Both the position numbers and the translations under genes were made by a program. Positions 20,723-47,903 of a stretch of DNA of 64,000 nucleotides are shown here, piece by piece. Source of the stretch: Blepharisma stoltei ATCC 30299 (lineage: Eukaryota > Protista > Ciliophora); the NCBI GenBank assembly GCA_965603825.1, contig CBFDEM010000053.1, forward strand, positions 124,001-188,000. The letters run 5' to 3'. Every line of letters starts with the position of its first letter. Within the stretch, counting starts at the first letter, position 1. The notes under the pieces are model-generated. The model made no database searches, was not told the origin of the DNA, and worked only from the letters and a program-made list of their open reading frames with translations.

Positions 20723-21454
20723 TTAGAGCATTCTAAGAACTAAGTTGTTTATCTTCTTTTCTCTGTTTCCCCAATCTCCTCCTTGAATATAGGAAGTCCT
20801 TTTATGGCTGAATCCACCTTTAGGTGAGGATAATTTGAATCTCCAGAGCAAGTTATTGACTTCTTTAAAGTGTGGCCCACAAGTAGCTAGTTCAGTGACT
20901 ACATCTTCAGCACAGACAATCTTGAATTTCCCAAGTTCCTTTTCAATCTGAGCATTATCATAAAGAGGAATTCTGTTTTTATTAAGCTTCAAGTAGCCTC
21001 TCTTGTAAACAAGCTTCTGAATGGTTTCTCTAGATGGGTATCCGTATGTAATCCAAGGCTCAACAAGTTTAAGCATATTCTTGGTAGCTTTGTTGTTTTT
21101 AATCAAAACTGCACTGTGAAGCTGAATAAGTCTAAAAAGCTTGAGAATTGATCTGACCTTTGGTGGACATCTGTTGATACCTTTGATTCTAATAGCGAGG
21201 ATCACTTTTGGCTCAGGCTCGACCCAGAAATCTCTGTTCTCGTTGGCTGTTTGTTGGTTGTCTTGGTTGAGGACTTGAGATGCAACATAATCTTTAAGAT
21301 GCTTTTCAGATCTTTCAAGGGCTTCTTGGGCTGCGGCTACACGATATTGCTCTGCCTGAACTTTAGCTTCAGTTCTTGCAGCTTCGTTAGCGGCAATTCT
21401 GCTTCTAAGCTTTTGTAGTGATTCAGGCACCTTCTTAGCCTCTTTCTTGACCAT
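20723..21454 (-). CDS. RPL7: 60S ribosomal protein L7 (uL30)
   Basis: IRIKGIN, LFRLIQ, VEPWITYGYP, KRGY, GGDWGNRE..IN.L motifs. Confidence 0.96.
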   Translation of the reverse strand: MVKKEAKKVPESLQKLRSRIAANEAARTEAKVQAEQYRVAAAQEALERSEKHLKDYVASQVLNQDNQQTANENRDFWVEPEPKVILAIRIKGINRCPPKVRSILKLFRLIQLHSAVLIKNNKATKNMLKLVEPWITYGYPSRETIQKLVYKRGYLKLNKNRIPLYDNAQIEKELGKFKIVCAEDVVTELATCGPHFKEVNNLLWRFKLSSPKGGFSHKRTSYIQGGDWGNREKKINNLVLRML

Positions 21455-22043
21455 AAATATGGATTATTACTGTGACCTTGGGCTAGAAAGAAAGAGAGCT
21501 GGTTATGCTAGGCTAAAATTCTTCGATTTGGAGATTTTCAAATTGGCGTGATTCAAGATTTATATATAAATTGATAGAAATCATTGAAGGGATAAAAACA
21601 GCATAAATCAAGGGACTGGATAGCGACAGCATATTGCCACTTCCTTTATTCTTACAAAATATTTAGGCGTAGGTTAACAATTTATCAAAACTAATCATTA
21701 AGAGGAAATTCTGCAGATTTATTCTTTAAGGGGCTTGGCTTGAAAATGTTAATAGCAAAGCAATCTCTCAATACACATCAGAAAGTGAAGATTTACTAGG
21801 AATTTCAGAAAATATAGCTAAAACGCTTCAAGTTTTACTAAAACGAAACAAGCTCATAATTATTGATATAATCGAAATATGAAGCAAATAATTAAGATTA
21901 AATTAAGTGTCTCTATATTTTATAAAAATTAAACTCTCTATATAAATAGCAAAGTTTATTAAATTTATTTAAGATAAATTATCAAGTAATTTATTTTAAT
22001 AAAAATATTTATACTTCAATTCATGCGAGCAATAATTTTATAT

Positions 22044-22159
22044 AAAAGTCATAGCCACTGCGCCAAGAGAGGTAGTTTAAACCAACGGCATTGCTAAACT
22101 CCCCGTGAAGGGAATATGCAAAATCCACATCGAAGTATCTCTTTAGCATTAGGCCACCC
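22044..22159 (-). ncRNA. candidate small structured RNA, vault-RNA/Y-RNA-like (copy 1)
   Basis: GC-rich island GGGUGGCC...GGCUAUGACUUUU; 5'/3' panhandle, UACUUCG motif, B-box-like GGUUUAAAC, GGCGC, upstream CCCATAA and TATA-like box. Confidence 0.6.
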
Positions 22160-22208
22160 TTTTTTCAATTACAAGGTTAAATATGGAATCTATTTTTTAG
22201 TATTTCAC

Positions 22209-22215
22209 TTATGGG
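22209..22215 (-). promoter_or_regulatory. CCCATAA upstream sequence element of ciliate snRNA/telomerase-RNA type (copy 1)
   Basis: Lies at -50..-56 from the predicted RNA start; ATATTTAA at -18..-25. Confidence 0.55.
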
Positions 22216-22758
22216 ATATAAAATTATTTTTTGTTAAAATTAATAAAATAAGTATTCAATGATTTAGAGATTTTCAAATTGATTTGACTCAAGATTTATA
22301 TATAAATTGATAGAAATCATTGAAGAGATAAAAACAGCATAAATCAAGGAACTAGAGAGCGACAGGATATTGTCACTTCCCTTATCCTTACAAATTATTT
22401 AGGCGTAGGCTAACAATTTATGAAAACTAATCATTAAGAGGAAATTCTGCAGATTTATTCTTTAAGGGGTTCGGCTTGTAAATTTTACTAGCAAAGCAAT
22501 CTCTTAATACATATCAGAAGGGGAGATCTATTAGGATTTTCAGAATATATAACTAAAACAAAACAAACTCATAATTATTGATATAATCGAATATGAAGCA
22601 AATAGTTAAGATTAAATTAAGTGCCTCTTTTTTTTATAAAAATTAAACTTTCTATATAAAACTCAGTAAATTTTAATAAATTTATTTAAGATAGGTTATC
22701 AAGAGATTTATTTTAATTAAAATATTTATATTTCAATTCACGCGAGCAACAATTTTAT

Positions 22759-22880
22759 AAAAAAACTAATGGCCACTGCGCCGAGAGAGGTAGTTTAAAC
22801 CAACGGCATTGGTGAAAATTCCCCCGTGAAGGGAAATTAGCAAATGCATATTGAAGTATCTCTTTGGCATTAGACCACCC
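22759..22880 (-). ncRNA. candidate small structured RNA, vault-RNA/Y-RNA-like (copy 2)
   Basis: GGGUGGUC...GGCCAUUAGUUUUUUU; same fold with pairing-compatible substitutions; T7 run at the 3' end. Confidence 0.6.
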
Positions 22881-22929
22881 TTTATTCACTCTCAAGGTTA
22901 AATATGGAATCTATTTTTTAGCATTTCAC

Positions 22930-22936
22930 TTATGGG
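22930..22936 (-). promoter_or_regulatory. CCCATAA upstream sequence element (copy 2)
   Basis: Identical -50..-56 spacing; ATATTTAA again at -18..-25. Confidence 0.55.
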
Positions 22937-23356
22937 ATATAAAATTATTTTCTTTTAAAATTAAAAATAAGTTATTGACGAGGAAAAAATTTGATAAATT
23001 GATATATAATTAGATTCAAAATAATGCCTTTATAAATTCAGCTGATGCTGCGGATTCTTTTATAATAATTGTTGAAGTAAATTCCACATGATGCAAGATA
23101 CTAATCCGCGCTGATATAAAAATTTATTCCTCAGAAAGATTAAACAGATTATAATTACCTGGTAGCATTTACCCAAAATCTAGCAGCATCTTAACTATTT
23201 TTATAATTACAATTATCTTTTTCCATTGAAAATCACTAAGCCAAAAAATTTTAATTCACATCTAATTTCTCCTATATCCATTATCAAACTGCATTATTAA
23301 CTCTGTCTGTTAATCATTAATTACTAAGCTTTTATAAATAAGATATTAATAAAGTC

Positions 23357-26300
23357 ATGGACTTTGACCCATCTGAAATTCACAATTATCTCGACTCTCT
23401 TTTCAAGTCAAGAATCGTCATAATTGATGGTGCGATGGGGACAATGATTCAGAAACACAAGCTTAAAGAAGCAGACTATCGTGGAGCCCAATTTATAGAT
23501 CATCCTCAAGACCTAATGAACAACAATGACATTCTGAGCATAACCCAACCTTCAATAATCGCCAATATTCACCGTCAATATCTAGACTCAGGTGCTGATA
23601 TAATCGAAACAAACACATTTAATGGGACATCTGTTGCCCAACAAGATTTCGGGACCCAAAATTACGTCAAAGAAATCAACCTCGCCGCAGCAAGACTCGC
23701 ACGTGAAGTCGTCGATGAATTTTCATCAAAAAACCCTTCACATAGAAGATTTGTCGCTGGAGCCGTCGGCCCGACCTCAAAAACAGCATCCTTAAGCCGA
23801 AATGTGGATGATCCTTCACAGCGTGACGTAACATTTGATGACCTTGTTGAGTCTTATTTCGAACAAATTCAAGCTTTAGTAGAAGGTGGAGTACACATAA
23901 TTTTGGTAGAAACAATTTTTGACACTTTAAACGCAAAAGCCGCATTATTTGCATATGAAAAATACTTTACTAGTAAGCCAAAATTGCCGTTAATGATATC
24001 AGGGACTATAAGTGATATGAGTGGCAGAACCCTTTCAGGGCAAACCGTAGAAGCCTTTCTTATTAGTGTGATGCATTCCAAGCCTTTGTGCATTGGGCTG
24101 AACTGTGCATTAGGCGCTACCAAAATGAAAGCATTTTTAGAAAACTTGTCAAGAATAGCTCCATTTTATGTCCACGCCTATCCTAATGCAGGGCTTCCTA
24201 ATGAAATGGGAGAGTATGACGAGACTGCTGATCAATTTGCTTCAAATGCAATGACATTTATCACTGATAAACTTGTCAATATGATCGGCGGTTGTTGTGG
24301 TACAACTCCTGAGTATATTCATGCTTTGAAAACTGCTATTGAAAGTTCAGGCGTCCATCCACGTGAAATCCCGAAGCCATCAGGTAAATTAATGCTTTCT
24401 GGGCTTAAAGAATTTATTTTAACAGAAAATATCCCTTTTGTAAACATAGGAGAAAGATGCAATATTTCTGGGTCGCTGAGGTTTAAAAAGCTGCTAGTCA
24501 CAGAAAATAACTTCGCTGGAGCTTTAAATGTTGCCAGAGATCAAGTAACAAATGGAGCACAAGTTCTTGATATAAATGTGGACGAAGGTATGATAGACAG
24601 TGTGGAAGTTATGAGCAAGTTCTTAAAAATGCTTACAAGCGACCCTGATATCGCTTCTGTGCCACTTATGATAGATTCTTCGAATTTTAAGGTGATTGAA
24701 GCAGGACTAAAAGTCTGCCAAGGCAAATGTATTGTAAATTCCATATCTTTGAAAAATGGAGAATCAGAGTTTTTAGAACAGGCTGGAGTTTTAAGAAAAT
24801 ATGGAGCTGCTGTTGTAGTTATGGCGTTTGATGAAACAGGCCAAGCGACAGAAATTGAGCATAAAGTCAGAATCTGTGAGAGAGCTCATGAATTGTTAAC
24901 AAAAACCCTTGATTTCCCTCCTGAAGATATCATTTTCGACCTGAACATCCTCACAATTGCTACAGGTATGGATGAGCACAACCCATATGCAAGAAATTTT
25001 ATCGAGGCTACCAAAGCTATCAGACAAAGGTTCCCTCAATGCCACGTGAGTGGCGGCCTAAGCAACCTTTCTTTCAGTTTCCGAGCTTTAGCCCAGTTCC
25101 GTGAGCAAATGCATGCAGTTTTTCTCTATCATGCAATTCATGCCGGAATGGACATGGGGATTATAAATGCCGGAGCTTTGCCTATATATGAAGATATTCC
25201 TGCAGATTTACGTAAAATATTTGAGGAGATCATTTTTAATGAGTCTGAGGATGGAAAACACGTCGAAAGGGTTATTGAGTATGCAGAAAATTTGAAGAAA
25301 AACAAGACAAAACAGACCACAGAGAAAAAAGAAGCTGAATGGAGATCATTGCCTTTACCTGAAAGGCTGAGATATTCATTGGTAAACGGTCTGTCAGAAT
25401 TCATTGAAAAAGATCTACAAGAAGCATTAGGAGAATACCCAGGACCACTCAATATTATAGAAGGTCCTCTAATGGACGGAATGTCTGTTGTAGGTGATTT
25501 ATTTGGAGCTGGAAAAATGTTTTTGCCTCAAGTTATCAAGTCAGCCAGAGTTATGAAGCAAGGAATTGCACATCTTGAGCCATTAATGCTTCGAGGTGAA
25601 AGCCAAAAAAAGAGCGGTGTTATTCTTATGGCGACTGTAAAAGGGGATGTCCATGATATAGGAAAAAATATTGTAGGTGTTGTATTAAGATGCAACAATT
25701 ATGAAGTCATTGATTTAGGCGTCCAAGTTTCATGGGAAACTATAAAAGAAACCTTAAAAACTCACCATATCGACGTCATCGGATTGTCAGGGCTTATAAC
25801 TCCTTCTCTAGAACATATGGTAAACTATGCAAAGCATATGGAATCTGGCGGCATGACCATTCCTTTATTGATAGGAGGTGCAACTACTTCTAAAATCCAC
25901 ACAGCTGTAAAAATTTCCCCTAATTATTCCCACCCAGCTGTTCACGTTTTAGATGCTTCTAGATCAGTTGGAGTAATCTCAGCCCTATTGGATCCCAATT
26001 TAAAGAGAAGTTTCTACTCAGAAATCAAAGAAGAATATGACGAAATCCGTAAGGACTATTACGCAACTCAAAAGGAAAAAAAATTTAGATCATTAAAAGA
26101 AGCAAAATCTAATAAATTTGAAATAAATTGGGCTAAATACACCCCAGTGCAGCCTAGAGTTGAAGGGGTGACTGTGATTGATGATCAAGATTTAAATGAA
26201 TTAATAGAATATATTGACTGGGGTCCTTTCTTTTCTGTGTGGCAAATAAGAGGAAGATACCCAAATAGGTCATTTCCAAGGATTTTTAATGATGCCAAGG

Positions 26301-27031
26301 TAGGAGAACAAGCTAAGCAGCTTTATGAAGATGCTCAAAAAATGCTGCAAGAAATAATCAAAGGGAAATTATTACTCGCTAAAGGAGTTTATGGGATTTT
26401 CAAAGCAAAAGCTGTAGGAGATGATATAGAGGTCTATAAAGGTGGCGAAACTTTTAAGTTTTTCACCTTAAGACAGCAAGAAATTTTGGCTGCAGATGGG
26501 CCGAATCAAGCTTTAAGCGACTTTGTATCGCCAATTGAAGACTATTTTGGAGCTTTTGCAGTGACAGCAGGGCTGAACTGTGACGAAATCTCTCAAAAAT
26601 ACGAAGCAGAAATGGACGACTATAAGAGCATCATGATCAAAGCCCTCGCTGACCGTCTTGTTGAAGCCTTTGCAGAAATGCTGCATAAAAAGGTAAGAAA
26701 TGAGTATTGGGGTTATTCTTCTTCAGAAAATTTGTCAACAGAAGAATTGATTCATGAAGAATACCAAGGGATAAGGCCAGCTCCAGGGTACCCAGCCCAG
26801 CCAGACCATTCAGAAAAGTTAACTCTATGGAGACTGCTTGATGTGGAGACCAATACCAGCATAAAACTGACAGAATCTTTGGCTATGCATCCAGCTGCTT
26901 CTGTATGTGGTCTTTATATTTCTCACCCACAAGCTAGATACTTTGGAGTCGGACAGATATGTGAGGACCAAATACAAGATTATGCCTCAAGAAAAGGAGT
27001 CTCAGTAGAAGAAATCAAGCAATGGCTTTAA
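23357..27031 (+). CDS. MTR: cobalamin-dependent methionine synthase
   Basis: [15 protein letters not shown] (Zn), GERCN pterin domain, DVHDIG B12-binding motif, [14 protein letters not shown] activation domain; 1224 aa. Confidence 0.98.
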
Positions 27032-47830: not shown

Positions 47831-47903
47831 GCCCGTTTAGCTCAGTCGGTAGAGCGCCAGCCTCTTAAGCTGGTGGTCGGGGGTTCGAGCCCCCCAGTGG
47901 GCG
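47831..47903 (+). tRNA. tRNA-Lys(CTT)
   Basis: Cloverleaf: GCCCGTT/AGTGGGC acceptor, GCTC/GAGC D arm, CCAGC-CT-CTT-AA-GCTGG anticodon arm, GGGGG-TTCGAGC-CCCCC T arm; followed by a T6 Pol III terminator. Confidence 0.96.

What the first reader, a model, noticed from the sequence alone, without database searches (positions are those of the whole stretch)
22044..22880. Two tandem genes for an unannotated ~120-nt structured RNA resembling vault RNA, each with a ciliate snRNA-type promoter
Seen in sequence: each copy of the non-coding duplication holds a GC-rich island. On the minus strand copy 1 reads GGGUGGCCUAAUGCUAAAGAGAUACUUCGAUGUGGAUUUUGCAUAUUCCCUUCACGGGGAGUUUAGCAAUGCCGUUGGUUUAAACUACCUCUCUUGGCGCAGUGGCUAUGACUUUU, and copy 2 reads GGGUGGUCUAAUGCCAAAGAGAUACUUCAAUAUGC...CCCUUCACGGGGG...GCCGUUGGUUUAAACUACCUCUCUCGGCGCAGUGGCCAUUAGUUUUUUU. 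The ends pair as a panhandle: GUGGCC/GGCUAU versus GUGGUC/GGCCAU, then UGCYAAAGAG with CUCUCUYGGCG. A central hairpin is capped by CCCU-UCAC-GGGG. Most stem differences between copies are G-U/G-C/A-U swaps that keep pairing on the minus strand but would be A-C mismatches on the plus strand. Both copies have CCCATAA at exactly -50..-56 and ATATTTAA at -18..-25, although the spacer bases differ. Established knowledge, recalled from memory: Tetrahymena snRNA and telomerase-RNA genes use an upstream CCCATAA-containing element near -55. Vertebrate vault RNAs are ~100-nt Pol III panhandles ordered GGCUGGC..GCUCAGCGG-UUACUUCG..variable loop..B box..GGCGC..UUUU, and they bind the TROVE protein TEP1, which has a ciliate homologue (p80). 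Inference: the same order appears here (GGGUGGY..GCYAAAGAG-AUACUUCR..variable hairpin..GGUUUAAAC..GGCGC..UUUU), so these may be ciliate vault RNAs, or a related Y-like TROVE-bound RNA, driven by an external promoter with decayed internal A/B boxes. Caveats: both copies have an internal U4, and the duplication looks recent, so conservation alone is weak evidence.
Basis: partly seen in the sequence, partly recalled or inferred. Interest (0 to 1): 0.92.

Follow-up and report, generated by a model that had tools for sequence, protein, structure and literature searches.

The report
Vault-like small RNA genes in ciliates
The two short RNA genes belong to a 20-gene family in the ciliate Blepharisma that is probably the ciliate form of vault RNA, which the papers I could search report only from animals and trypanosomes; neither expression nor protein binding has been shown.

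Summary
Two tandem minus-strand genes (22044-22159, 22759-22880) lie between RPL7 and methionine synthase in Blepharisma stoltei. They are 2 of 20 full-length paralogues at six loci; 18 carry the U6-type upstream element at -54..-56. A core helix (4 bp, bulged A, 5 bp, then UACUUC) shows compensatory changes across 22 sequences. A related heterotrich keeps a syntenic copy whose arms are conserved while the spacer is unalignable. Twelve of the 20 genes match Rfam Vault as the only family, over the whole model, but below its cut-off (best 26.9 of 34 bits). A marine homologue with a near-intact B box scores 32.9. The window's own copies do not hit Vault directly and lack A/B boxes, so I file them as a vault-like variant, not proven members. 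The genome encodes three major vault proteins and three TEP1/p80-type TROVE proteins; I found no Ro60. Best reading (0.75): Pol III vault-RNA homologues bound by p80. Expression is untested, because the RNA contigs available could not show it. This scan reached the same reading earlier from other contigs of this genome.

The parts
22044..22159 (-). RNA gene copy 1, 112 nt plus U4 terminator
   Evidence: (76.3 bits with family model R1, which includes it)
22209..22215 (-). Upstream sequence element CCCATAA of copy 1 (-56..-50)
   Evidence: same position as in U6 and U2 of this genome
22177..22184 (-). TATA-like box of copy 1 (-25..-18), U6-type spacing
22132..22147 (-). Copy 1 conserved 5' arm: 4 bp, bulged A, 5 bp, then UACUUC (aligns to the Rfam Vault 5' core in paralogues)
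22057..22070 (-). Copy 1 conserved 3' arm ending GGC-GC-AG, partner strand of the bulged helix
22084..22131 (-). Copy 1 variable central domain: long hairpin capped by CCCU-UCAC-GGGG (22101-22112) and an internal U4 (22120-22123)
   Evidence: (68% identity between copies against 90-93% in the arms)
22759..22880 (-). RNA gene copy 2, 115 nt plus U7 terminator; internal U4 at 22815-22818; one A-C mismatch in the core helix
   Evidence: (74.8 bits)
22930..22936 (-).
22898..22905 (-). TATA-like box of copy 2 (-25..-18)
21518..22967 (.). Tandem duplication of a 720-736 bp non-coding unit that carries the gene and its promoter; about 86% identical downstream of the RNA
20723..21454 (-). Flanking gene: ribosomal protein L7 (uL30)
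23357..27031 (+). Flanking gene: B12-dependent methionine synthase, the synteny anchor

Best explanation
The two genes are members of an expanded family of ciliate homologues of vault RNA. (1) Shown in sequence: each has the same upstream element and TATA spacing as this genome's U6 gene and ends in a U run; inferred: RNA polymerase III makes a 112-115 nt RNA from an external type-3 promoter, which freed the internal A/B boxes to decay. (2) Shown by covariation: the two ends pair into a terminal stem, an internal loop and a helix of 4 bp, bulged A, 5 bp, followed by an unpaired UACUUC, around a freely varying centre. (3) Inferred from animals and trypanosomes: this conserved helix is bound by the TROVE domain of a TEP1/p80 protein, which stabilises the RNA. 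(4) Inferred: part of this RNP is loaded into vaults built from the three major vault proteins, and the rest acts outside, with the variable centre exposed to other RNAs or proteins. My odds: real Pol III RNA gene family 0.95; homologous to vault RNA 0.8; bound by p80 0.75; loaded into vaults 0.55.
For: Promoter: U6 element -55, TATA -24; family -54..-56 and about -22..-25; U2 (Pol II) -55 and -30; Stentor consensus RTCCCWTA (PMC8287931). Family of 20, converged over two models. Structure: 98.6% of cells paired, 5 of 13 pairs with changes on both sides, 0 of 500 shuffles reach the score, slid controls 40-55%. Selection: syntenic copy upstream of methionine synthase in a related heterotrich, 56 bits with a model that did not include it; only the arms align in the spacer. 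Rfam Vault: 26.9 bits as the sole family for one paralogue; 11 of 12 hits among the other 19 genes and one degenerate copy are Vault, right strand, model positions 1-99. Marine homologue 32.9 bits, B box with 1 mismatch; 19 chance loci holding the same search motifs gave no Vault hit. Partners: three major vault protein genes; three TROVE genes whose named relatives are TEP1/p80.
Against: No sequence reaches the Vault gathering score of 34. The window copies and their syntenic orthologue give no Vault hit at E<=10; they are linked through the family model. A and B boxes fail the published consensus. No RNA contig covers the genes (uninformative for short RNAs without poly(A)). The marine homologue was found with a motif pattern, so its score is partly selected. 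Paralogues are related, so covariation counts are not independent events. The p80 proteins lack TEP1's DUF4062 part, and none was found in the genome. Both window copies have an internal U4, and copy 1 ends in only U4.
Confidence: 0.75

Rival explanations
1. A ciliate-specific Pol III RNA family whose likeness to vault RNA is convergent, for instance from shared Pol III box remnants and a panhandle, and which binds some other protein.
For: All Vault scores are below the cut-off; the conserved arms total only about 35 nt; much of the Vault model's information lies in A/B-box-like positions.
Against: The match covers positions outside the boxes (UACUUC, GGCGC, the bulged A register, the terminal stem), Vault is the only recurring family, motif-matched chance loci do not score, and both known partner proteins are encoded.
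Confidence: 0.12
2. A Y-RNA-like RNA working in RNA quality control with a Ro60-type ring protein.
For: The three TROVE proteins are about 600 aa stand-alone proteins, two with a weak vWA_Ro60 match, the Ro60 layout; trypanosome vault RNA has been said to hold a Y-like role (PMC9326685).
Against: No Y-RNA family matched in any Rfam scan. The named relatives of the TROVE proteins are TEP1/p80, and only two uninformatively named TROVE chains, no Ro60, matched in the PDB at E<=1. A Y-like function for a vault-type RNA remains possible.
Confidence: 0.06
3. A selfish Pol III repeat (SINE-like or MITE-like) family with no host function.
For: Twenty copies plus fragments; one promoterless, head-to-tail rearranged copy on contig C8.
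Against: 18 of 20 copies keep an external promoter that retroposition would lose; copies sit in tandem clusters; arms are conserved at a syntenic site where the spacer is not; copy number is low and stable over two searches.
Confidence: 0.04
4. The family is functional, but one or both window copies are truncated or read through and no longer work (not exclusive with the best explanation).
For: Internal U4 in both; copy 1's terminator is U4 with the next U5 at nt 154; copy 2 has an A-C mismatch in the core.
Against: Two other paralogues also have an internal U4 and three others end in U4; the promoter is better conserved (98%) than the spacer (86%); a diverged strain holds both copies and shows one base left out at 22120, in copy 1's U4; the A-U pair typical of this sub-group is shared with the syntenic orthologue.
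Confidence: 0.2

Closest known systems
Vault RNA, Rfam RF00006 (deuterostome vtRNAs)
   Same: Size range, terminal stem, internal loop, 4 bp / bulged A / 4-5 bp helix, UACUUC after it, GGC-GC on the 3' strand, variable centre, U-run end (alignments); TEP1-type and major vault protein genes in the same genome.
   Different: Below the gathering score; internal A/B boxes decayed; purely external U6-type promoter; shorter terminal stem in most copies; 20 genes against 1-4 validated per animal (PMC7058938); partner is a stand-alone p80 without DUF4062.
Trypanosoma brucei vault RNA (TBsRNA-10)
   Same: A protist vault RNA recognised by short 5' and 3' stretches forming a bulged terminal helix, Pol III transcribed, in a genome with TEP1, three MVP paralogues and no Ro60 (PMC9326685, PMC12547018).
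   Different: It was shown to bind TEP1 and the vault and was tied to trans-splicing; none of that is shown here. I could not obtain its sequence (the primary paper is not held), so no direct comparison was made.
Y RNA (Rfam RF00019) and Ro60
   Same: Pol III panhandle with a bulged helix bound by a TROVE protein; external promoter in animals (my own knowledge).
   Different: No Rfam match; no Ro60-type protein found.
Arisong RNAs of spirotrichs and Paramecium (PMC3177221)
   Same: Multi-gene ciliate small RNA family behind an snRNA-type upstream element.
   Different: Arisong is a coaxial dumbbell with a GUUC tail and a Pol II-type 3' box; this family is a panhandle ending in a U run.

Membership tests
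Vault RNA (RF00006) | Score at or above the Rfam gathering cut-off (34 bits) | tested here: not met
   Best paralogue 26.9, marine homologue 32.9, window copies no hit at E<=10
Vault RNA (RF00006) | Vault is the best and only family, over the whole model | tested here: met
   12 of 20 genes, model 1-99, correct strand; control loci negative; not met directly by the two window copies
Vault RNA (RF00006) | Paired 5' and 3' ends with a bulged helix around a variable centre | tested here: met
   98.6% paired, compensatory changes at 5 pairs; centre varies from about 15 to 70 nt
Vault RNA (RF00006) | Internal Pol III A and B boxes (TRGCNNAGYGG, GGTTCGANTCC; PMC5054030) | tested here: not met
   Window copies: 3-4 mismatches to A, 4 to B; the marine homologue has 1 mismatch to B
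Vault RNA (RF00006) | Pol III transcription unit (promoter and U-run terminator) | tested here: met
   By sequence only: U6-type geometry and U4-U7 ends; polymerase not assayed
Vault RNA (RF00006) | Expressed as a discrete small RNA | tested here: inconclusive
   No contig from two RNA runs covers the genes, while RPL7 and MetH are covered; contigs of such libraries lose short RNAs
Vault RNA (RF00006) | TEP1/p80 and major vault protein encoded in the genome | tested here: met
Vault RNA (RF00006) | Binds TEP1/p80 and associates with the vault particle | not testable with these tools
   needs a pull-down and vault purification
Y RNA (RF00019) | Match to Y-RNA models | tested here: not met
   none at E<=10
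Y RNA (RF00019) | Ro60 orthologue in the genome | tested here: not met
   three TROVE genes found; the one searched has TEP1/p80 relatives and the other two are its close paralogues; no tree was built
Arisong RNA | Dumbbell fold, 3' GUUC tail, 3' box | tested here: not met
Heterotrich telomerase RNA | Template complementary to the telomere unit (permutation of CCCTAACA) | tested here: not met
   absent from both copies on inspection; unit

The most novel reading that the evidence does not exclude
Vault RNA is ancestral to eukaryotes, and in heterotrich ciliates it became a diversified repertoire: one p80-binding helix carrying about six different central domains, under a fully external promoter, bound by stand-alone p80 proteins that lack TEP1's NADase part. 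The paralogues would act as interchangeable adaptors, and these RNAs rather than telomerase RNA would be the natural ligand of ciliate p80.
Probability: 0.3. Interest if true: 0.88.

Novelty: new variant of a known kind. Interest (0 to 1): 0.72.

Why it matters
Vault function is a long-standing open question, and validated vault RNAs are listed only for deuterostomes and trypanosomes in the reviews I read (PMC7058938, PMC9326685). A homologue in ciliates would add a third major eukaryotic lineage and support an origin as old as the vault shell. It would show which part of the RNA is kept once the internal promoter is dispensable: the bulged helix and UACUUC survive the loss of the A/B boxes, so they are probably kept for protein binding. 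It also gives ciliate p80, first purified with Tetrahymena telomerase, a specific candidate RNA partner, and the family model built here is a practical probe for other protists.

Tried and rejected
Rfam scan of the locus itself: nothing meaningful. Genome-wide Vault search: best 21.5 bits at an unrelated site; its filter scored only 49 of 2452 candidates and missed the true paralogues. Single-sequence folding: not significant. A short-motif genome search was uninformative. Metagenome pattern scan: 26 of 27 hits were chance; two viral-contig hits gave no family match. Synteny at methionine synthase in more distant relatives (66-70% identity): no copy within the contigs. No family member next to p80 genes in this genome, the related species or Stentor coeruleus. 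The species behind the marine homologue could not be named. The primary papers on trypanosome vault RNA and on p80 binding are not held. Rejected: telomerase RNA (no template), Arisong, tRNA, protein-coding use of the spacer (no long frame).

Full report
Organism and setting. The window lies on contig C53 of a 41.46 Mb, 64-contig assembly. Proteins of this genome are named Blepharisma stoltei by NCBI, and the size fits the published 41 Mb somatic genome, whose annotation used only a restricted set of RNA models (10.1101/2021.12.14.471607). The finding sits in the 1.9 kb between RPL7 and B12-dependent methionine synthase, which holds a tandem duplication of a 720-736 bp unit.

Observation. Folding energy is not above shuffled controls and does not choose the strand, and the locus has no meaningful Rfam match. 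Taken alone, the two copies would be weak evidence. Identity between them is uneven: promoter 98%, 5' arm 90%, 3' arm 93%, centre 68%, downstream spacer 86%.

A family, not a pair. A search for the promoter pattern turned up further loci with the same arms. A covariance model from 12 of them found 20 full-length genes at E<1e-7, then a gap to E=0.8; a second model gave the same 20. They lie at six loci: C7 (7), C6 (5), C63 (4), C53 (2, this window), C12 and C50, and are 66-121 nt long. Degenerate or partial promoterless copies lie on C63, C44, C56 and C8.

Promoter. Eighteen of 20 have CCCWTAA starting at -54 to -56; the word occurs at about 1e-4 per base in the window. U6 has it at -55 with TATTTAA at -24, taking the U6 start 5 nt upstream of the Rfam hit, where its 5' stem begins (my reading). 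Both U2 genes have it at -55 with the TATA-like word at -30. The window genes have TATTTAA at -24, the U6 arrangement. Element-to-TATA spacing is reported to select the polymerase in plants and ciliates, and the Stentor consensus is RTCCCWTA (PMC8287931). All 20 genes end in U4-U7. Pol III transcription is therefore a strong inference, not a measurement.

Structure. In a 22-sequence alignment I counted pairs in the register of the Rfam Vault core. 98.6% of cells pair; five of 13 pairs change on both sides, including G-C to A-U in the window's sub-group and A-U to U-A in the C63 group; no shuffle of 500 reaches the percentage paired or the covariation score, and slid controls fall to 40-55%. 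The bulged A is invariant while its neighbour varies between A-U and G-U. The sequences are related, so these counts overstate independent events.

Conservation outside this genome. A related heterotrich (run SRR24908292; methionine synthase 79% identical, with an in-frame UGA as in the Blepharisma code) has a copy upstream of the same gene on the same strand, with its own upstream element (56 bits, E 5e-13 with model R1, which did not include it). In the spacer only the two arms align. A diverged strain of the species, probably HT-IV (inference), holds both copies. A metagenome scan gave one real homologue among 27 pattern hits (L113, 42 bits, E 8e-9). Its flanking reading frames run through UAG and UAA but not UGA, which points to a ciliate with a different code from Blepharisma; I could not name it.

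Is it vault RNA? One C6 paralogue, which I picked as the most vault-like of 12, matches Rfam Vault at 26.9 bits as the only family (E 2e-4 before allowing for that choice). In an unselected scan of the other 19 genes and one degenerate copy, 11 of 12 hits were Vault, each over model positions 1-99 and on the right strand (15-26 bits). The marine homologue scores 32.9 against a cut-off of 34 and keeps a B box with one mismatch in a small hairpin. As it was found by a motif pattern, I ran 19 chance loci holding the same pattern: none hit Vault. The printed alignments show shared positions beyond the promoter boxes. Against membership: nothing passes the cut-off, the window copies and their orthologue do not hit the model directly, and the A and B boxes fail the published consensus (PMC5054030). 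I therefore call the family vault-like and probably homologous, not a proven member.

Partners. The genome has three major vault protein genes (831-866 aa open frames) and three TROVE genes of 590-606 aa. The named relatives of the one searched are TEP1 or p80, none Ro60. No DUF4062 domain was found, the part of human TEP1 recently reported to be an NADase (10.64898/2026.05.01.722283); a negative domain search is not proof of absence. In animals TEP1 binds vault RNA and is needed for its stability and vault association, and trypanosome vault RNA co-purifies with TEP1 and MVP (PMC7916137, PMC12547018, PMC9326685).

Mechanism. Most likely Pol III makes short panhandle RNAs from an external promoter; p80 binds the conserved bulged helix and the adjacent UACUUC; a fraction is packed into vaults, and the variable centre is free for other contacts. 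Promoter, fold and conservation are shown in sequence; transcription, binding and loading are inferred. The window's pair is a long-centre sub-group with C50 and the syntenic orthologue (moderate support, long branches).

Expression. No listed run holding this stretch is on record as RNA. Contigs of two probable RNA runs cover RPL7 and methionine synthase deeply but not the RNA genes. Such data lose short RNAs without poly(A), so this is inconclusive.

Literature and earlier notes. My searches found no report of ciliate vault RNA; the library lacks most subscription journals. Arisong RNAs are different (PMC3177221). After I had reached this reading, the scan's notes showed four follow-ups on other contigs of this genome with the same conclusion; they are not independent evidence.

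Verdict. A real, conserved, apparently unannotated RNA gene family; new variant of a known kind; probability 0.75 that it is the p80-bound vault RNA of ciliates; interest 0.72.

Noticed in passing
L003:1455-1590 (G000:C8, about 210080-210215, minus strand): A promoterless copy of the window-type RNA that starts at nt 22, runs to the 3' end of the stem and continues directly into nt 4 for another 40 nt. It fits a head-to-tail join better than a linear copy (score 163 against 116). The same junction appears in a contig of the other strain at low depth, 3.5. It could come from reverse transcription of a circular RNA, a template jump, or hairpin-guided DNA slippage.
   Followed up: partly
window 21375-21871: RNA-run contigs cover about 420 nt upstream of the RPL7 start, inside the downstream half of the duplicated unit (depth 130 in one run, under 10 in another). 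No long reading frame. Possibly a long 5' UTR or a non-coding transcript.
   Followed up: partly
L132:76-139 and 1-40: The related species also has a degenerate second copy and a further upstream element at the contig end, so this locus seems to duplicate in tandem repeatedly.
   Followed up: partly
G000:C30:505262, C27:399834, C56:124793: Three stand-alone p80 genes with no DUF4062 gene found in the genome: a vault system apparently without TEP1's NADase domain.
   Followed up: partly
L035 (G000:C53:457428), L137, L138: U6 and U2 share the upstream element at -55 but differ in TATA position (-24 against -30), a simple rule for sorting Pol III from Pol II small-RNA genes in this genome (three genes only).
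   Followed up: partly
window 47831-47903: tRNA-Lys(CUU), the only other RNA gene in the window above an Rfam cut-off.
   Followed up: no
window 20845-20934: Contigs of DNA and RNA runs skip 88 bases within RPL7; as it occurs in DNA too, it is probably a paralogue aligning, not splicing.
   Followed up: no
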